64,000 nt of DNA from Glycera tridactyla (lineage: Eukaryota): contig OZ286472.1 in the NCBI GenBank assembly GCA_965644265.1, forward strand, positions 26,226,001-26,290,000. The letters are read 5' to 3'. Every line of letters starts with the position of its first letter. Positions within the stretch are counted from its first letter, which is position 1. Both the position numbers and the translations under genes were made by a program. Below the pieces are notes generated by a model, which did not search any database, was not told the origin of the DNA, and saw only the letters and a list, made by a program, of their open reading frames with translations. Shown here in pieces: positions 28,194 to 60,340 of the stretch.

Positions 28194-28587
28194 TAGTTCA
28201 CACCTTCCCGAGGCATCAGCTCACACATTTGCCGTAGACCATAGTCGGCAAATCCTTCGATGGCTGCTTAGGACAGGTGATCTAGGTGGTGAAATAGGCA
28301 GCTTGTGCTGCTTAAGACAGGTGGCTGCTTAGGATGGCTGCTTAGGCCAGGGTGCTGCTTAGTCAACCGTAAATATTAACTGAATGTATGACTCATGTAA
28401 ATATGATTTTTTGGTACTGTTCAATCTCTCAAGCTAAACTTTGATGAAGGAACCTGTTTTAGACAAACATTTCTTGATTTTTCCTTCCAATTTTCTACCA
28501 TATTGAACTTGTTAGGTAATATGATAGTGCTTTCATAAGATGGGTGGTCTTTCCATCTGCTGTTACACATGTTTTTATCCGTTGCAG

Positions 28588-28798
28588 GTAAACCCTGGTG
28601 AATTAGATCCCAAGCTTGCCTACATTCAAGTTACGTATGTCACACCCTACTTTGATGATAAGGAGTTGGAGGAGCGACAAACCGAATTTGAACGCAACAA
28701 TGATATAAACCGATTCATGTTCGAGACACCATTTACGAAAAATGGGAAACCTCGAGGAGAGATTGAGGAGCAGTATAAGCGAAGGACTATCCTGACAA
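28588..28798 (+). CDS. DOCK9: DOCK-D exon G
   Basis: TTGCAG / GTAAGT; [70 protein letters not shown], phase 0/1. Confidence 0.98.
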
Positions 28799-29686
28799 GT
28801 AAGTCACAGTCATGATATAGTCGATCCTCATATGAGTGAACACTCTATGCTCTAGAATATTCAGTTTTGCATGACAGGAAATCTTTCAGTGTAGCTATAT
28901 ATCGTATGGAAATTGTGAAATCACCATTGCAAAAAAAAACAATGGTTTTTTGGCATGAGGAGAAAGATTTGATTTATAAGAAAATACATGGTATTCAAAG
29001 GGTCTATGTGTTTCAGATTCAAGGTGATACAGGTGTAACAACACAAGTGAAATGTGATCATAAGGCAGGGGGAATGGTTGCCAAGCAAAACAACAGTTGT
29101 CACATGTATGATCGTGTTCAATGCCATAGTGCGCATGAGCAATAGTTACGATCAGAGCAGAGAATTTGAAAATCTTGTCAGTGGAGAATTTCGAAAGCAG
29201 CAGCATGGTCGGCGAGTGGTACGAAGTTGCCCCTGTCCAGGAAGTGACATTTTCGATAGCAGTTGTTTTTACTTGTCAAAGGCATTGCTGACTACAGGTT
29301 TTACTTCATCTGAGAATCCATGCCCGGTGTCTCGTACAAATATTAATCTTATCAAGTCAGATCATCAGTGAAATCTTATCACAGTGAGATATTGGTTGTA
29401 TCTTTCATGGGCATGGTCTGTACATTTCATTACTGCGGAGATGCCAACCATCACGATTTTGGAGTAATAATCAATATATTTGGGTCAAAATTTTGCCTTT
29501 TTCACAATATTATCACATGTAATTTCCACTTTTCATATTCGATCTCTGCAAATATTGCCACCGTTACTCCTGAAAATTAGCATTATTTCTGCTCCTGGAA
29601 TCATCCCTGGTTGATTGATGGACCTAGTGATACGAAATCTGTACTAGATCTCATGATAAGAAATATGTTTGGATTATTATTTTCAG

Positions 29687-29877
29687 CATCACATTCATTC
29701 CCCTATGTCAAGAAGCGAATCTTGGTTGTGTATCAACGAGATGAGGAACTAACTCCCATTGAAGTCGCCATCGACGAGATGCGTAAAAAAGTGGCAGAAT
29801 TGAACGAAGTTGTCAATCATCCTGCTCCAGACTTCAAGAAATTGCAGCTCAAACTACAGGGCAGTGTCAGTGTACAG
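29687..29877 (+). CDS. DOCK9: DOCK-D exon H
   Basis: TTTTCAG / GTGAGT; (T)SHSFPYVKKRILVVYQRDEELTPIEVAIDEMRKKVAELNEVVNHPAPDFKKLQLKLQGSVSVQ, phase 1/0. Confidence 0.98.
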
Positions 29878-30425
29878 GTGAGTGTATTCACAGCTCAAAC
29901 TACAGGGCAGTGTCAGTGTACAGGTGAGTGTATTCACAGCTCAAACTACAGGGCAGTGTCAGTGTACAGGTGAGTGTATTCACAGCTCAAACTACAGGGC
30001 AGTGTCAGTGTACAGGTGAGTGTATTCACAGCTCAAACTACAGGGCAGTGTCAGTATACAGGTGAGTGTATTCACAGCTCAAACTACGGGGCAGTGTCAG
30101 TGTACAGGTGAGTGTATTCACAGCTCAAACTACAGGGCAGCATCAGTGTACAGGTGAGTGTATTCACAGCTCAAACTATGGGGCAGTGTCAGTGTACAGG
30201 TGAGTGTATTCACAGCTCAAACTACAGGGCAGCATCAGTGTACAGGTGAGTGTATTCACAGCTCAAACTACAGGGCAATGTCAGTGTACAGGTGAGTGTA
30301 TTCACAGCTCAAACTACGGGGCAGTGTCAGTGTACAGGTGAGTGTATTCACAGCTCAAACTACAGGGCAGTGTCAGTGTACAGGTGAGTGTATTCACAGC
30401 TCAAACTACAGGGCAGTGTCAGTGT
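29845..30425 (+). repeat. 46-bp minisatellite (12 full + 1 partial copy) spanning the exon H / intron junction
   Basis: Unit CAGCTCAAACTACAGGGCAGTGTCAGTGTACAGGTGAGTGTATTCA at 29845, 29891, 29937 ... 30351, partial at 30397. Confidence 0.98.
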
Positions 30426-30497
30426 CATGTGACTAGATTGTACCATTTTGAAAGGAATGCAATGTCTTTGTGTTGCAGATACACAGTTATGCAGATG

Positions 30498-30661
30498 NNN
30501 NNNNNNNNNNNNNNNNNNNNNNNNNNNNNNNNNNNNNNNNNNNNNNNNNNNNNNNNNNNNNNNNNNNNNNNNNNNNNNNNNNNNNNNNNNNNNNNNNNNN
30601 NNNNNNNNNNNNNNNNNNNNNNNNNNNNNNNNNNNNNNNNNNNNNNNNNNNNNNNNNNNNN
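30498..30661. other. Assembly gap
   Basis: Run of N. Confidence 0.99.
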
Positions 30662-30678
30662 TATTGATGGTGTTGCAG

Positions 30679-30779
30679 GTGAACGCAGGACCATTGGCAT
30701 ATGCTGAAACCTTCCTGACCGACGAGAAATCATTCATCTACAAACGAGAAAAAGTAGCAGATCTTAAACAGGTGTTCAG
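30679..30779 (+). CDS. DOCK9: DOCK-D exon I (DHR2 catalytic VNAGP loop)
   Basis: TTGCAG / GTGAGG; VNAGPLAYAETFLTDEKSFIYKREKVADLKQVF(R), phase 0/2. Confidence 0.97.
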
Positions 30780-30858
30780 GTGAGGAGCTTTTCCAAAATC
30801 AACTATTGCTATGACTATTGAAGCTATCTCCTCACAACCAGGGCATTTGCTTATTGTT

Positions 30859-30899
30859 TGTTGACGTTTCGGCTTTCATCGGCAGCCATGTTCAGAACA
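30859..30899 (-). ncRNA. Degenerate minimal hammerhead ribozyme motif (Penelope-like remnant)
   Basis: Minus strand TGTT-CTGAACA-T-GGCT..AGCC-GAAACGTC-AACA; core differs from CUGANGA at G8. Confidence 0.5.
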
Positions 30900-31036
30900 G
30901 TTAGGATATGATCTTGATTAGAATAAGTCAGTTAAGATAAGTTTGAGTGTATATTGAGAGGTGATTGAATGAGAGGATTATAAGTTTCAGAATTGGCTTC
31001 ATTGATTGCCCTGATTGCCTGTCCTACATAACCATC

Positions 31037-31077
31037 CCATCTGATGAAGTGCTGCAATAGTACCAAAATCTTAATGG
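31037..31077 (+). ncRNA. Highly degenerate minimal hammerhead-like motif
   Basis: CCAT-CTGATGA-A-GTGCT-GCAAT-AGTAC-C-AAAATCTTA-ATGG; GAAA mutated to AAAA. Confidence 0.35.
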
Positions 31078-31308
31078 AAGCATAACTCATTCTGATAACG
31101 CATTATAAGGGCACCAGCAGTGGGAATCGTCCCAGTATTTTGCTTCTTTATATTACTTATATTGTGACACATTTCATTAGAAAATTGTGAAGGCTACTAA
31201 TGTGTCTGTTCCTTATCCTGAGTTGTCAGAATCGTGAAAATCAGAGTATTCCTCACTGTGTGGCATAATATGCTATGATAGTACTGTTTGTTTGTGTCCA
31301 TCTTTTAG

Positions 31309-31447
31309 AGATTTTGTGAAAGTGTGCAATAAAGCTCTGGAACTCAACGCTCGTCTCATCACATCTGACCAACTCGAGTATCATGACGCATTACGGAAAA
31401 ACTTCCGAGAGATGGCCGATAAACTCGCTGAAATATTCGATGAAATC
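31309..31447 (+). CDS. DOCK9: DOCK-D exon J (end of DHR2)
   Basis: TTTTAG / GTAAGT; (R)DFVKVCNKALELNARLITSDQLEYHDALRKNFREMADKLAEIFDEI, phase 2/0. Confidence 0.96.
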
Positions 31448-33068
31448 GTAAGTATTTCATGTAGTATGTTGCCCAAGTTAGATATAGGTACATGGTTGTG
31501 ATAATATTAGCTGCAAATAGATATCGTAGATATCGTTCATCGGTATTAACCCTGATGTTGCTATATAGCAAGATTTATTTCCAGTAGACTGAAGTATAAC
31601 AGCCCTCACCATCACCCATACTGATTTATTTCATGTGGCCCACCCAATTTCAAGAATGATACATGGTTTAACCTCAGTCCAAAGTGATAATATGTTATCT
31701 AAGAGAAGTTTTCAAGGTACTCATAGTAAGTTATGAATCTTGCCTGCTCTGGAGGTTTGAATCTTTTGCCTCATCACATGATTTAGTTACTATTTTTCGA
31801 TCACATGGCAGGTCTTTATCTCATGAAACATGTCCTGTTAGCTGAGTCCTGATTATACTAATATCACTATAGCCCACCTTGGATAGAACTACAAAAATGA
31901 TTATATAACATTCCCATTAGAAGAGGAGGTTCTTCTGTTCATACTCATGAGAACAAACACCAGCATGGTGTATCAGATGTTTACGTCTGTTGAACGTCAA
32001 ATAAATTTGAGAAAAAAAATTACAGAAAACCTCATCTCGTGAATTGATGGGGTTCCCACGGAAACTAAAGACATCACCATGATGAATATATTCACATGTA
32101 AATTACAGGTTTATTGTATTGTAATCATTTTTGACGCTCGTGGTTCTTTTAGGTTTAGATATTACCAAAAGGTAATCATACAAGTATGCTGAGAAGAAAC
32201 CCCTCACGATTTAGCTCTCTACTTCTTGACATTGTGGTCTCTCAATCTGATTAAAACCACTAACAATTAAGCCAGCATCCTGTCCGTTATTATGTTCATG
32301 TTCGTTCCTTGTGAATCTCCTTAACGACCAGTGTTTTCACCATGCTGTTGATGTGTCCTTGTTGAGCTTGCACTCTATATAAGTATTACCCTCATGTTGA
32401 TATAATCCATTCTCACAACAGTGTTTGTTTTATCACTCCCTTCATATATCTGATATTTCTTCTTAATATGTTCTGATTCAAGTGTCTTGGGTTTTCTCAT
32501 TCATTATGTTATTTTGTTATCATTAAGGACCTTTACTCACAAAGTTATCAAGTGTCAAAGTTTTCTTGCCAACTTATCTACAGTTACAGCTTCGTGCATA
32601 TTTATTGAGAATTGAGATCCTGCAGAGCTGCTAAGGCTGTTAATGGCTTTGTAATAGTGAATCATCTGGAAATGGTAATGATAAGTCTTCAATTTTGACT
32701 TTTGAATAAGTCTTCTCCAGGACAAAATCTAATGATGCGTTGAACAGAGTTGTAGCCCCAAGGCTCTGATGCAATCATATTTTCATGATCCTGAGAATGA
32801 TAGTTAAAAGTCATCCTCACATCTTTTGAGTACAGGTACACTTGTGATGAGAGACAGTCATGGGCACTGCAAAAATGGTCTCTCATAACATCTGGTTTCC
32901 ATGGTGTTCACAAAAACCTGTCTGACATCTGACATGTCAGAAGAGAATTCTCAAATTGTCTTGACTAGGCTGAAAATGTTTCACAATCGCTGCTTCCATA
33001 GAGTTATGTTTCATTTTGTTTTCTGTTTGATGTTGAACTGATACCAACTTAATGGCTCCAAGACACAA

Positions 33069-56025: not shown

Positions 56026-57466
56026 TTCACTCCTTTTGCTTCACTGAACCCCTCTTTATGAATTGTTGTCTGACCTAAACTGTCTTTATCTCCACTCTGT
56101 GGTGGCTATTTCACCTGACATGTCATGATAATATTTGCCTGCATCTTGTATGATTTGCTCATGCTAACCAACTCAATCTGTATGATTGAAACCAGACTAT
56201 GACAATCTCATCTCATAATGGATTGACCAGTGCAAATTCCAACACGTCAGATTCCCCACCACCCATCTCTCGAAGTTTGTCAACATTAAAAGTAGTCCCT
56301 CCCTTAGCAACCCGCTCGTGACTTGTGACGTTAGGGTTTCCGTAGACATTCTTTATTCGTTTAATCTATCTACCTATCAAAGATGATGGTCTTCCAGAAG
56401 ATGTTTATGCTGAAACTGATTACCTAGCAAACCATATCTTGTCTATAAAGCAATTTCCGTTAGCGAACTACTTGGAAATAGTTTTGATTCAATTGTTCCC
56501 GGAGGGGTGAGTCGTATTGAGAGGCTGCGGCATTAGACTAGGGCAAACCGAAGAGGCCGTCTTGATCGCTGATTGGCCACATGCCTTGAACTGACCAATG
56601 AGAAGCCGTCTCTCTCACGATCTCGGCCTGGCCCGCAATATGGCGTGACTTGAGCAATTTCTCTACAACCTTCATTCGTATTTTGCTGAATTTATAAGCC
56701 AATACTGCCTCTTGACATAACGAATAATTTTCTTTTGAAAGAGAAGTCTCTATTTGTTCCTACAAACGTGTTGGACTAGCTTTTGAGTAAAATTTGCGTC
56801 CATGAAATGACGCTGTCTGTTATGGATCTGAGACGGATATATCGCGATCACCGAAATGGTCTGTGTTTTCCCTTCTCCTCATGCCGACTCCTTTGCCTGT
56901 ATATACTGACCTTTGGCCACCACACATCGGTGAATACAACCTGTGTCATTTACTTAGATGATATAGGCCACTGGGCGATATGGGGTAGATATAGTTTGGC
57001 GACGTCTCTCCTCCATAGCGCCCAGGGCTTACAGTTTCATGTGTTACATTCGCTTGGAATACCCTTTTTGCATTCGAAACTAGTTTCTGCAACGTTTAAG
57101 CAAGCTTAACAACCACTTGGTCTTGGTATTACTTGTATAACTTCAGCTGGTAATTCATCAGCTGACAGAGTTTTTATTTGTTAACCAAATATCTTAGAAA
57201 TTATTATGTATTGACCATGATACTACACCTATCTAGTACCAAATTCTTTATCAATCCTATCTCTTTTCTCCCATGCAGTTGTCAATGGAATACCCCATTA
57301 CAAACATGGTAAGAATCTTCTCCTGTTCATTATTTCTAGGGGTTCGGATGGGGCTTAGAAACCCCACTCTGATTCATATATCATATGACCATTTAGATAT
57401 GATGAAATTTGGGTCAAGGAAATTATCACTGTACCCAACATTAGTCTATCCAGAGATAATGTATCT

Positions 57467-60340
57467 ATGTACAGCTTGAGTGACCTCTCCGTGATGAAAG
57501 GTCTTGTATTTGCCCATCTTAACATCCATTATATATTGCCTAAACTTGATGAAATAAAAAGAATTCTCCATCATGGAGATATAGACTTGCTAGCAATTTC
57601 TGAAACTTTCCTCAACAGTGATATTGAAGATTCTGAGCTGTATATTGAAAACTACTGTCTAATACGCTTAGACAGGCAGGAACTGACTCGCAAATCTAAA
57701 GGTGGAGGCCTGGTGATATACATCAGAGACAATATCTCGTTCAAATATGAAGAAACCCTTTGTATCAGCAAAGGGTGCCTTGAACTCTTGTGTGTGAGGA
57801 TTACTCTTCCCAACACCAGACCTATTTTTTGTAATGCTATCTATAGGCCACCTGATGGTAAAATACAGGATTTCCTCTCAGATATAGCCAGAACTCTTGA
57901 CATGTTAACATCCATTGGTTTTGTTGAAACAATCTGCCTTGGTGATCTGAATCTTGATTTCCTCAAACCAAATACAAGGACAATGAGGCAATTCAGGAAT
58001 CTTGCTTATACCTATGACCTATCACATCTGATCTCTGAACCAACAAGAATCTCTGATTCTACCAGTACCTGTATTGACCAAATTCTGACAAATAGACTGG
58101 AATTGGTGAAAACAGCAGGAATCATTGAGATGGGAATTAGTGACCATTACCTCATTTTCCTTCAGAGAAAACACTCCAAAAAGAAACACTCGTCCAAATT
58201 CATTAGAGCAAGGAAAATGAGGGGTTTCTCTGAAGAAAAGTTTTTGAATGACATAGAATCTATTGATTGGACAAATTTGTATGACCATACTGATCCAAAT
58301 GATATTTGGAATGATTTTGTTCACGAATTTCGCAAAGCCTGTGATATTCATGCCCCTTATACTGACATGAAGGTTCAAGGGTCTCTACCAGAATGGATGA
58401 ACCATGACTTTGTCTCACTATGCGATGCTAGAGACTCTGCCAAACGAATTGGAGATAGAACCAGATGCCCAGTGGCCAAGGAGAACTATAGAATTCTGAG
58501 AAATCAGGTGGTGAGCCTTGGGAGAAATCTCAAAAGAAATTTCCTAACTAACTCTATTGAGGAGAGCAAGTATAACAGTAAGAAACTTTGGAAAATTCTT
58601 AGAAGCCTTGTCCCCTCAAATAAAGTTTCTGAATCAGCTGAAGTAGAAATTAATGGGAAAACTGATAAATTGGGAATCTCGGAAGACTTTAATAATTTCT
58701 TTTGTAATGTAGGAGCTGAATTATCAAAATCTCTCCCAAATCTGGGTAACATTGATCTGGAGGACATTACTAGCCCAGGTCAAATATTTAGCTTTACTAG
58801 AGTTTCTGAATCTGATACGCGCAAGCTCTTATCTAGAATTAGTGCATCCAAGGCCACTGGGCTTGATGGGATTAACCCCAGATTTTTAAAATTGGCATGT
58901 GACAAGACTTGTGGTCCAATAAGCCATTTGCTGAATTCTTCTATAACATCTGGAATTGTACCATCTGATTGGAAGATTGCACGAGTTACCCCCTTATATA
59001 AAGGTGGGGACAGACAATCCCTTGGGAACTATAGACCAATTTCAGTTTTGCCAGTCCTAGGCAAAATACTCGAAAGAATAATTCATGATCAGCTTTACAA
59101 TTTCTTTAATAGCTTTAACATTCTGGATCCAAATCAACATGGCTTCAGACCTGGACACTCCATGGTGGGATGCACAGCTGAATTAGTTGATCATCTTTAT
59201 CTAAATTTGGATAATAATATGGTCACTGGCCTTGTGTTTTTAGACTTAAAGAAGGCATTTGACACTGTCGACCACCATCTAACGTCGCTAAAATTAAGAA
59301 AATATGGGGTGGTCGGCAGTGCAAATTCTTGGCTTAGAAACTATCTGTCAAACCGCACTCAACGCACCGTATACCGTGGGGTATCTTCTGAAGTCATGAG
59401 CATTTCATGTGGTGTTCCCCAGGGGTCCATCCTTGGTCCCCTTCTTTTCATCATATATATCAATGATCTCCCCACAGTCGTCCGCAATTCTCAAGTGCTT
59501 TTATACGCTGATGACACTGTTATTTTCTACACCGGAGCTAGTGCTTATGAGGTCGAGAACTCTCTCCAGGAGGACCTAAATTCTATTGAATCCTGGCTGA
59601 AAAATAACAAGCTCTTTTTAAACGTTCAGAAAACAAAATCAATGTTAATCAGGAACCATTATTTCAAAGGACATACTGATCTACAGCTATCAATGTCAAG
59701 CGAACCGATTGAACAGGTCGACACCTTTAAATATTTGGGTGTTATAGTAGACCATAAGTTAAGATTTGATGCACATATTGATCACGTTTGCAAGAAAAGC
59801 AGAAGAAAGATTGGTCTCTTGGGCAGGGTTCGAAACTATATGACCTTAAACACTAGTCTCTTATCATACAAGTCATTGATCTCTCCCTTGTTTGATTATT
59901 GTGACATAATATATTCGCAGTCGACTCAGGAGAGTCTTTTACGCCTTCAGAGACTTCAGAATCGATGTTGTAGGATCATTCTTAAAAAACCATTCAGAAC
60001 TCCTACTATAGATATGCATGTTGAGCTAGGCTTGAATATGTTATCAGATCGCAGGGAACTTCATATGCAGGTATTCATGTATAAACTAGTAACTCTGAAG
60101 ATTGATTCCCATTACTTCGCTGCACGATTGCTTAGCCTTGATTTCCAGCATGAAAGAGAGACTAGATCTCGAATGCATGGAAACCTCATTGTTCCTAGAA
60201 CTAGAACAAACCAAGGAGAGAAGGCACTATCAGTATGTGGAACAAAAATGTGGAACTCACTAGATATAGAATCAAGAAAACTGCCTTCTGTGGGATCATT
60301 CAAGAAAGCATGTGTATCTAAAATATGTACTAAAAATTAA
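57467..60340 (+). CDS. LINE ORF2: apurinic-like endonuclease + reverse transcriptase (957 aa)
   Basis: APE motifs HLNI, AISET, YRPP, GDLN, IDQI, SDH; RT motifs KATGLDG, NYRPIS, QHGFR, DLKKAFD, GVPQGSILGP, YADD, KYLG. Confidence 0.98.
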   Translation: MYSLSDLSVMKGLVFAHLNIHYILPKLDEIKRILHHGDIDLLAISETFLNSDIEDSELYIENYCLIRLDRQELTRKSKGGGLVIYIRDNISFKYEETLCISKGCLELLCVRITLPNTRPIFCNAIYRPPDGKIQDFLSDIARTLDMLTSIGFVETICLGDLNLDFLKPNTRTMRQFRNLAYTYDLSHLISEPTRISDSTSTCIDQILTNRLELVKTAGIIEMGISDHYLIFLQRKHSKKKHSSKFIRARKMRGFSEEKFLNDIESIDWTNLYDHTDPNDIWNDFVHEFRKACDIHAPYTDMKVQGSLPEWMNHDFVSLCDARDSAKRIGDRTRCPVAKENYRILRNQVVSLGRNLKRNFLTNSIEESKYNSKKLWKILRSLVPSNKVSESAEVEINGKTDKLGISEDFNNFFCNVGAELSKSLPNLGNIDLEDITSPGQIFSFTRVSESDTRKLLSRISASKATGLDGINPRFLKLACDKTCGPISHLLNSSITSGIVPSDWKIARVTPLYKGGDRQSLGNYRPISVLPVLGKILERIIHDQLYNFFNSFNILDPNQHGFRPGHSMVGCTAELVDHLYLNLDNNMVTGLVFLDLKKAFDTVDHHLTSLKLRKYGVVGSANSWLRNYLSNRTQRTVYRGVSSEVMSISCGVPQGSILGPLLFIIYINDLPTVVRNSQVLLYADDTVIFYTGASAYEVENSLQEDLNSIESWLKNNKLFLNVQKTKSMLIRNHYFKGHTDLQLSMSSEPIEQVDTFKYLGVIVDHKLRFDAHIDHVCKKSRRKIGLLGRVRNYMTLNTSLLSYKSLISPLFDYCDIIYSQSTQESLLRLQRLQNRCCRIILKKPFRTPTIDMHVELGLNMLSDRRELHMQVFMYKLVTLKIDSHYFAARLLSLDFQHERETRSRMHGNLIVPRTRTNQGEKALSVCGTKMWNSLDIESRKLPSVGSFKKACVSKICTKN

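What the first reader, a model, noticed from the sequence alone, without database searches (positions are those of the whole stretch)
29845..30425. Minisatellite that multiplies a DOCK exon end and its splice donor 12 times
Seen: the 46-bp unit is the last 33 nt of exon H (QLKLQGSVSVQ, next to the DHR2 catalytic VNAGP loop) plus 13 intronic nt, so there are 12 tandem CAG|GTGAGT donors. Reading past the first donor reaches TGA at 29971-29973; donor 2 shifts the frame and later donors include that stop. Each unit also reads CAG|30 nt|GTGAGT, a frame-preserving pseudo-exon encoding LKLQGSVSVQ with a weak acceptor. Inference: the spliceosome must select the most upstream of 12 near-identical donors; copy number could tune productive versus NMD transcripts or yield proteins with a repeated active-site strand.
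Basis: partly seen in the sequence, partly recalled or inferred. Interest (0 to 1): 0.75.

Follow-up and report, generated by a model that had tools for sequence, protein, structure and literature searches.

The report
Splice-donor minisatellite in a DOCK9-like gene
The last 33 bases of an exon of a DOCK9-like signalling gene and the splice signal after it are copied 12 times in a row, but assembled RNA uses the first, genuine signal, so this is a tolerated repeat of a known kind ("mirage"; human F7 intron 7).

Summary
A 46-bp unit (33 exonic + 13 intronic nt) is repeated 12 full times plus a 29-nt partial copy at 29845-30425. All 12 CAG|GTGAGT donors are intact. The exon is the DHR2 lobe-C exon of a DOCK9/10-like gene, and the intron sits directly before the codon aligned with the catalytic valine (VNAGP).

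Only donor 1 (29877|29878) keeps the reading frame; donors 2-12 all lead to premature stops. Spliced contigs from three public runs in two studies join 29877 to 30679. Two long contigs run through exons G-H-I-J without a break. One run also holds a unit-to-unit junction contig, so the duplication is not purely an assembly artefact. Copy number is unverified, and an N gap lies 72 nt downstream.

A close relative (85% nt identity in the exon) and 20 more distant loci have no array. The spare copies vary without coding constraint.

This architecture is already described as amphioxus "mirages" and as the human F7 IVS7 minisatellite, where only the most upstream of identical donors is used. This scan has already reported several such arrays elsewhere in this genome. 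This is an ordinary new member of a known kind.

The parts
28586..28798 (+). DOCK exon G (DHR-2 lobe B)
   Evidence: Pfam PF20422, E=7e-34. RNA joint 28798->29687 with GT..AG ends in X3, X4 and X5.
29687..29877 (+). DOCK exon H (end of lobe B linker and start of DHR-2 lobe C), ending ...KLQLKLQGSVSVQ
   Evidence: Matches PDB 2wm9_A (DOCK9 DHR2) residues 284-346, E=3e-19. Covered by RNA contigs with 0 mismatches. 24 synonymous versus 2 non-synonymous codon differences to relative L001.
29878..29883 (+). Authentic 5' splice site GTGAGT (donor 1), the only productive donor
   Evidence: Joint 29874->30676 'cut +3', which is 29877|30679 with GT..AG ends, in X1, X4 and X5. Frame table.
29845..30425 (+). 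46-bp minisatellite: 12 full units plus a 29-nt partial unit. The first unit contains the exon H / intron junction.
   Evidence: TRF score 1092; unit table; a 69-nt contig of run X1 crosses a unit-to-unit junction without mismatch (record 5).
29924..30389 (+). Eleven decoy donors CAG|GTGAGT, one every 46 nt (exon-side last bases 29923, 29969 ... 30383)
   Evidence: All verified as GTGAGT. Each would give a premature stop. No joint from any of them was seen.
29971..29973 (+). First in-frame TGA reached if donor 1 is read through
   Evidence: Translations.
30397..30425 (+). Partial 13th unit without a donor (continues CATGTGAC...)
30498..30661 (.). Assembly gap (164 N) inside the same intron, 72 nt after the array; left unfilled
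30679..30779 (+). DOCK exon I. Its first codon GTG is the Val of VNAGP (the catalytic nucleotide-sensor position).
   Evidence: Aligns to 2wm9_A 347-380. Pfam DHR-2 lobe C positions 29-61. RNA joints on both sides.
31309..31447 (+). DOCK exon J (partial extent)
   Evidence: Joint 30777->31307 'cut +2' in all four runs; tblastn.

Best explanation
This is a young, lineage-specific minisatellite that arose by tandem duplication of a 46-bp segment spanning the exon H / intron boundary of a functional DOCK9-like (DOCK-D) gene. It belongs to the type called a 'mirage' in amphioxus and known from the human F7 intron 7 VNTR. It makes up most of an intron of about 800 nt. The 11 extra perfect donors are decoys. 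The splicing machinery uses the most upstream donor, the only one joined to the full exon, as shown experimentally for F7 (5'->3' oriented selection / exon definition). Any transcript spliced from a downstream donor carries a premature stop and would be expected to be removed by NMD. The array is therefore a tolerated by-product of repeat instability, not a regulator. What is shown: the array, the gene identity, the frame consequences, use of donor 1 in assembled RNA, absence of the array in relatives, and lack of coding constraint on the copies. What is inferred: the selection mechanism (by analogy with F7), NMD clearance, and neutrality.
For: Array anatomy. DOCK9/10 DHR2 identity and position directly before the catalytic Val. 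Spliced contigs join 29877|30679 in X1, X4 and X5. The X4 contig of 1307 nt and the X5 contig of 1969 nt run unbroken through exons G-H-I-J. Donors 2-12 all give premature stops. The closest relative L001 (85% nt, 97% aa identity in the exon) has a single exon end and donor followed by unrelated intron sequence. No array is found at this junction in 20 further related loci. Among 150 protein representatives only one, P0012, shows a second copy of the exon end. Every variant copy type changes the would-be peptide, while the real exon shows 24 synonymous versus 2 non-synonymous differences. The two-unit variant pattern of units 6-7 recurs in units 8-9, with one extra change in unit 8, which suggests block duplication as is usual in minisatellite turnover. 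The RNA has no special structure (z = 0.17). Literature: mirages in amphioxus globin, Adh3, TnC and PGBD5 genes do not disturb splicing (PMC3087553; PMC3902484). In F7 IVS7 only the most upstream of identical donors is used (PMC1557585).
Against: The RNA evidence consists of k=31 contigs, not reads. The 33 nt before every donor are identical, so a junction k-mer alone cannot tell donor 1 from donor k. The argument rests on contig continuity with unique exon H sequence and on the absence or low depth of unit-junction k-mers. My rough bound is that at most about 5-15% of steady-state transcripts retain units. NMD could hide substantial mis-splicing. Only X1 shows both the array and the productive junction in one run; the individuals behind X3-X5 might carry fewer copies or none. 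Copy number and polymorphism could not be measured, and an N gap lies next to the array. In-vitro work on duplicated strong donors (recalled from memory: Reed & Maniatis, Eperon and colleagues) often favours the intron-proximal site, so preference for the upstream donor is not a universal rule.
Confidence: 0.8

Rival explanations
1. Regulatory array: the number of decoy donors sets the ratio of productive to NMD-targeted transcripts, or in-frame use of a unit (CAG|30 nt|GTGAGT) yields DOCK proteins with an extra LKLQGSVSVQ strand next to the catalytic valine.
For: Eleven perfect-consensus donors sit within 506 nt of the real one, and every one of them would give a premature stop. The 30-nt pseudo-exon is frame-preserving. 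In run X1, unit-junction k-mers reach pooled depth 4.08 against 7.64 for the productive junction, so some unit-containing RNA exists; it may simply be pre-mRNA.
Against: Only the three canonical joints were found in four runs. The pseudo-acceptor is weak, with 45% pyrimidines against 65-75% at the real acceptors of exons H and J. Adjacent units leave only 16 nt between a donor and the next acceptor, too short for an intron. The array is absent in the closest relative and in all other loci checked. The copies show no coding constraint. The known analogues, F7 and the amphioxus mirages, are silent.
Confidence: 0.07
2. Assembly artefact: the array, or its length, was created or inflated by mis-assembly beside the gap.
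For: A 164-N gap starts 72 nt after the array. Units 1-4 are identical over 184 nt, which short reads cannot count. No DNA run covering the locus was available.
Against: An independent 2018 run (X1) contains a 69-nt contig crossing a unit-to-unit junction with no mismatch. The inner units carry distinct variants in an ordered two-unit pattern, which collapsed or invented repeats would not show. Earlier notes of this scan report many similar arrays in this genome; I did not check those.
Confidence: 0.08
3. Junction-targeted duplication: a mechanism in this lineage preferentially duplicates splice junctions, so the array marks a directed process rather than a chance overlap of a minisatellite with an exon end.
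For: Earlier notes of this scan list many donor and acceptor arrays in this genome. The exon end plus donor is itself a cryptic hexamer repeat (four AGTGTN-like hexamers in a row, read directly from the sequence), which could favour slippage.
Against: Only 1 of 20 DOCK junctions in the window is amplified. The window holds about 22 other arrays away from DOCK exons. A rough hand estimate (sum of array periods about 1300 nt x 20 junctions / 63 kb) gives about 0.4 junction-spanning arrays expected by chance, so one observed case needs no targeting.
Confidence: 0.05

Closest known systems
Amphioxus 'mirage' minisatellites (Adh3, globins BflGb6/9, TnC, PGBD5)
   Same: These are tandem repeats whose units span an exon-intron boundary and so multiply a splice site. 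Unit sizes are 10-160 bp. Regular splicing is undisturbed. Units are homogenised within the array and degenerate at its edge (PMC3087553; PMC3902484).
   Different: The host is not Branchiostoma: the B. floridae DOCK9-like protein is only 71% identical over this exon. The gene is different. Length polymorphism and somatic instability, shown for Adh3, could not be tested here.
Human F7 intron 7 37-bp VNTR (Borensztajn et al. 2006, PMC1557585)
   Same: The first repeat unit spans the exon-intron boundary. There are 5-9 identical donors there and 12 here. Physiologically only the most upstream donor is used, and the downstream ones are silent pseudo-sites.
   Different: The F7 donors are sub-optimal, whereas all 12 here are perfect consensus CAG|GTGAGT. 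In F7 some pseudo-sites would keep the frame; here none does. The functional competence of the decoys was shown by mutagenesis in F7 and is untested here.
Intron gain or exon creation by tandem duplication of an AG|GT-containing segment (the model discussed for mirages in PMC3087553)
   Same: Each unit carries an AG and a GT flanking 30 in-frame nt, which is the raw material that model requires.
   Different: There is no evidence that any unit is used as an exon. The pseudo-acceptor is weak and the spacing is 16 nt.
Regulated unproductive splicing (poison exons or sites coupled to NMD)
   Same: Alternative donors would introduce premature stops.
   Different: Regulated poison sites are typically conserved and detectably used. 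This array is absent from the closest relative, and no alternative joint is seen.

Membership tests
Mirage-type minisatellite (tandem repeat spanning an exon-intron boundary) | Head-to-tail array whose first (or last) unit contains the authentic exon-intron junction | tested here: met
   Unit 1 (29845-29890) holds the junction 29877|29878, which is confirmed by RNA joints.
Mirage-type minisatellite (tandem repeat spanning an exon-intron boundary) | Repeat units retain the splice-site consensus | tested here: met
   CAG|GTGAGT is invariant in all 12 units. Six variable sites among 46 positions would miss the 9-nt site by chance with P of about 0.25 (hand calculation), so this is not evidence of selection.
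Mirage-type minisatellite (tandem repeat spanning an exon-intron boundary) | Regular splicing is not disturbed; the authentic site is used | tested here: met
   Spliced contigs from X1, X4 and X5 join 29877|30679, and unbroken G-H-I-J contigs exist. This is contig-level evidence only.
Mirage-type minisatellite (tandem repeat spanning an exon-intron boundary) | Length instability or polymorphism between haplotypes | not testable with these tools
   Only k=31 contigs were available, and no DNA run held the locus.
F7-IVS7-type donor VNTR with upstream-donor dominance | Decoy donors are functional but silent as long as the upstream donor is intact | not testable with these tools
   This needs minigene mutagenesis. 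Only the silence at steady state was seen.
DOCK-D (DOCK9/10/11, zizimin) guanine nucleotide exchange factor | DHR-2 catalytic domain with lobes A, B and C | tested here: met
   Pfam PF06920 (exon A), PF20422 (exon G, E=7e-34) and PF20421 (exons H and I). Ten collinear exons match DOCK9 proteins by tblastn.
DOCK-D (DOCK9/10/11, zizimin) guanine nucleotide exchange factor | Invariant catalytic valine of the alpha10-insert nucleotide sensor | tested here: met
   Exon I starts with the Val of VNAGP, aligned to residue 347 of chain 2wm9_A. This equals Val1951 if the crystallised construct starts at residue 1605, which I recall from memory. The role of Val1951 is described in PMC10152721.
DOCK-D (DOCK9/10/11, zizimin) guanine nucleotide exchange factor | Closer to DOCK9/10 than to the other DOCK subfamilies; N-terminal PH domain | tested here: inconclusive
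   The best PDB matches are DOCK9 (3e-19) and DOCK10 (2.5e-18), against DOCK8/6/7 at about 1e-11 to 3e-12. The N-terminal part of the gene lies outside the window, so the PH domain was not seen.
Regulated unproductive splicing (NMD-coupled) | The alternative site is conserved in relatives and detectably used | tested here: not met
   The array is absent in L001 and in 20 other loci. No alternative joint was found.

The most novel reading that the evidence does not exclude
The array is a polymorphic dosage modifier. With 12 perfect-consensus donors, a copy-number-dependent share of DOCK9-like pre-mRNA is spliced from a decoy and destroyed by NMD, invisibly to steady-state contigs. Copy number would then tune the level of a Cdc42 exchange factor. 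More broadly, the abundance of such arrays in this non-chordate genome would reflect an unusually strict upstream-donor rule or a junction-prone duplication process.
Probability: 0.07. Interest if true: 0.6.

Novelty: new member of a known kind. Interest (0 to 1): 0.25.

Why it matters
The locus is a clean natural example of a long-standing question: how one of many identical 5' splice sites is chosen. Here there are 12 perfect-consensus donors, and only one is compatible with a catalytically intact DOCK protein. The intron sits directly before the catalytic valine codon, so any mis-choice abolishes function. That makes the locus a convenient reporter for donor-choice rules outside vertebrates. 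As a biological finding it is ordinary. The repeat type is described (amphioxus mirages, human F7), the expected outcome (first donor used) is what assembled RNA shows, and this scan has already logged several sister cases in the same genome. Its practical value is for annotation, because gene predictors may pick a decoy donor or read through into the array.

Tried and rejected
- RNA structure that might mask the decoy donors: the fold of 29800-30030 is no better than shuffles (z = 0.17). Rejected.
- Rfam scan of 28500-31600: one sub-threshold chance hit only.
- ORFs through the array on either strand: none. Every + frame meets TGA once per 138 nt.
- Homology between the right flank of the array and the intron of relative L001: local alignment score 17, against a shuffle mean of 16. 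No information on the ancestral intron could be drawn.
- Organism identification failed. A search with the 983-aa LINE-like ORF gave at best 37% identity and no useful names. Cluster names gave Branchiostoma, Antedon, Mya, Tubulanus, insects and fishes, none of them close. A paper search for the assembly accessions of a related contig found nothing. I can only say that the genome is not Branchiostoma. Other notes of this scan call it an annelid; I did not test that.
- The DNA of P0002 and P0012 could not be fetched because the sample files are too large.
- The original mirage paper (Canestro et al. 2002, PMC117041) is not held. It is cited only through PMC3087553 and PMC3902484.
- One Pfam call failed on a wrong reading frame and was corrected.

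Full report
**Observation.** The stretch 29845-30425 is a head-to-tail array of a 46-bp unit (TRF: period 46, 12.8 copies, 95% matches, score 1092).
- Listed unit by unit, there are 12 full copies and a 29-nt partial 13th copy.
- Units 1-4 and 12 are identical to the consensus. Units 5-11 carry one or two transitions each, all in unit positions 13-28.
- The two-unit variant pattern of units 6-7 recurs in units 8-9 (with one extra change in unit 8), which suggests growth by block duplication.
- GTGAGT stands at all 12 expected donor positions.
- A 164-N gap lies at 30498-30661, 72 nt after the array. I did not try to fill it.

**Gene context.** tblastn with DOCK9-like proteins returned by the representative search maps ten collinear exons on the + strand between 13752 and 31450.
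- Pfam assigns exon A to DHR-2 lobe A, exon G to lobe B (E = 7e-34), and exons H and I to lobe C.
- Exon H (29687-29877) matches the DOCK9 DHR2 crystal chain 2wm9_A residues 284-346 (E = 3e-19), with DOCK10 next and DOCK6/7/8 much weaker.
- Exon I (30679-30779) matches residues 347-380 and starts with the Val of VNAGPLAYA.
- If the crystallised construct starts at residue 1605 (from memory), this Val is Val1951. That is the invariant catalytic nucleotide sensor described in PMC10152721.

**Consequences of each donor.** A local frame calculation shows that only donor 1 (last exon base 29877) gives an open frame into exons I and J.
- Donor 2 adds 46 nt and shifts the frame.
- Donor 3 creates a stop at the junction itself.
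- Donors 4-12 include the TGA at 29971-29973.
- No frame on either strand is open through the array.
- For this calculation the exon DNA was concatenated inside a script only. No joined model was saved or sent to any search, and all searches were done exon by exon by reference.

**RNA evidence.** Eight public runs hold about 12% of the sampled words of 28900-30497, which is roughly the exon's share. I laid the contigs of four runs from two studies on 28500-31600.
- Three joints appeared, all with GT..AG ends: 28798->29687; 29874->30676 (cut +3, that is 29877|30679; runs X1, X4, X5); and 30777->31307 (cut +2).
- The X4 contig of 1307 nt and the X5 contig of 1969 nt run without a break through exons G, H, I and J. 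Exon H has no mismatch, so these are transcripts of the same species.
- No other joint was reported.
- In X1 the graph breaks at the shared node. A 69-nt contig (29852-29920, no mismatch, depth 4.08) continues from a donor into the next unit, while the spliced path has depth 7.64.
- That contig shows that the unit-to-unit junction exists in an independent 2018 data set.
- Its depth is pooled over the 3-4 exact copies of that stretch. It therefore corresponds to roughly 1 per copy, which is compatible with ordinary pre-mRNA.

**Caveat on the RNA evidence.** The 33 nt before each donor are identical and the contigs are built from 31-mers, so the junction itself cannot distinguish donor 1 from donor k.
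- The inference rests on continuity with unique exon H sequence and on the absence (X3-X5) or low depth (X1) of unit-junction words.
- My rough bound is that no more than about 5-15% of steady-state transcripts retain units.
- NMD could hide more.

**Age and constraint.** The best protein hit, P0001 (98% identity), comes from an 834-bp metagenome contig, L001.
- Its exon is 85% identical at the DNA level, with 24 synonymous and 2 non-synonymous codon differences. It is therefore a related species, and the exon is under strong purifying selection.
- Its intron starts with the same GTGAGTGT and then runs into unrelated sequence, without any repeat.
- Twenty further related loci have a single exon end.
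- In 15 of them (L005, L006, L008-L020) the coding sequence simply continues (…Q|VHAGP…), so they have no intron there at all.
- Among 150 representative proteins, only P0012 shows a second copy of the exon end after the junction. Its DNA could not be fetched.
- Within the array, every variant copy type changes the would-be peptide: V>I, Q>R, V>I, Q>W, S>N.
- The array is thus young or lineage-specific, and its copies are not under coding constraint.

**Pseudo-exon idea.** Each unit does read CAG|30 nt|GTGAGT in frame.
- The acceptor has a poor pyrimidine tract (45%, against 65-75% for the real acceptors of exons H and J).
- Only 16 nt separate a donor from the next unit's acceptor.
- No such joint was seen.

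**Mechanism and comparison.**
- Tandem repeats spanning exon-intron boundaries are described in the amphioxus Adh3, globin, TnC and PGBD5 genes. They do not disturb splicing and show the usual minisatellite turnover (PMC3087553; PMC3902484).
- The closest mechanistic model is the human F7 intron 7 37-bp VNTR. Its first unit spans the exon 7 boundary.
- A panel of 50 F7 constructs showed that the downstream identical donors are functional but never compete with the most upstream one (PMC1557585).
- The present array has the same architecture, and the RNA data show the same outcome.
- The RNA shows no special structure that could mask the decoys (z = 0.17).

**Is junction targeting needed?** Only 1 of 20 DOCK junctions in the window is amplified, and the window contains about 22 other arrays. 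A rough hand estimate (sum of periods about 1300 nt x 20 junctions / 63 kb) gives about 0.4 junction-spanning arrays expected by chance. This single locus therefore needs no special mechanism.

**Organism.** The B. floridae DOCK9-like protein is only 71% identical over exon H, so the genome is not Branchiostoma. Other notes of this scan call it an annelid. My attempts to confirm that failed.

**Verdict.** The regulatory part is unsupported and is contradicted at contig resolution. The locus is a new member of a known kind of repeat, and this scan has already reported the same kind several times elsewhere in this genome.

Noticed in passing
window 29426-29477 (intron G-H): A stretch of about 40 nt is covered at depth 237-339 by RNA contigs of runs X3-X5 (23 in X1). 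The flanks on both sides are many and unrelated. It is probably the core of a short repeat or mobile element that is present in many transcripts.
   Followed up: no
P0012 (ENA ERZ27297570, contig of 6254 nt; no DNA available): In another, unidentified eukaryote the gene call reads through the same DOCK junction into a second copy of about 21 residues of the exon end (ELSEIISANPPDIKKLQLKLQ twice). This may be an independent duplication at the same junction.
   Followed up: partly
L005, L006, L008-L020 (JGI metagenome contigs): In 15 related loci the coding sequence runs straight from ...SVSVQ into VHAGPLAYA. These loci have no intron at this position, while L001, L003/L007 and L021 have it. The intron before the catalytic valine has therefore been lost or gained within the sampled relatives.
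   Followed up: partly
L001:508-513 versus window 29872-29877: The close relative ends the exon with ACG (Thr) instead of CAG (Gln). TVNAGP also occurs in 3 of the 150 representatives, so the residue before the catalytic Val tolerates Q/T.
   Followed up: partly
window 29860-29886: The exon end plus donor is itself a cryptic hexamer repeat: four AGTGTN-like hexamers in a row, encoding SVSV and then Q|VSV. This may have favoured replication slippage at the origin of the array.
   Followed up: no
window 57389-60337 (+): An uninterrupted 983-codon ORF. Its homologues carry reverse-transcriptase and endonuclease domains (PF00078, PF03372, PF14529). This is an apparently intact LINE-type element, with the best database identity only 37%.
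   Followed up: partly
window 15531-16316 and 2222-4188: A 394-bp unit is repeated twice at 99% identity inside the 10-kb DOCK intron B-C. A 147/442-bp satellite of about 2 kb lies near the window start. The window holds about 22 distinct tandem arrays, so this genome region is rich in minisatellites.
   Followed up: no
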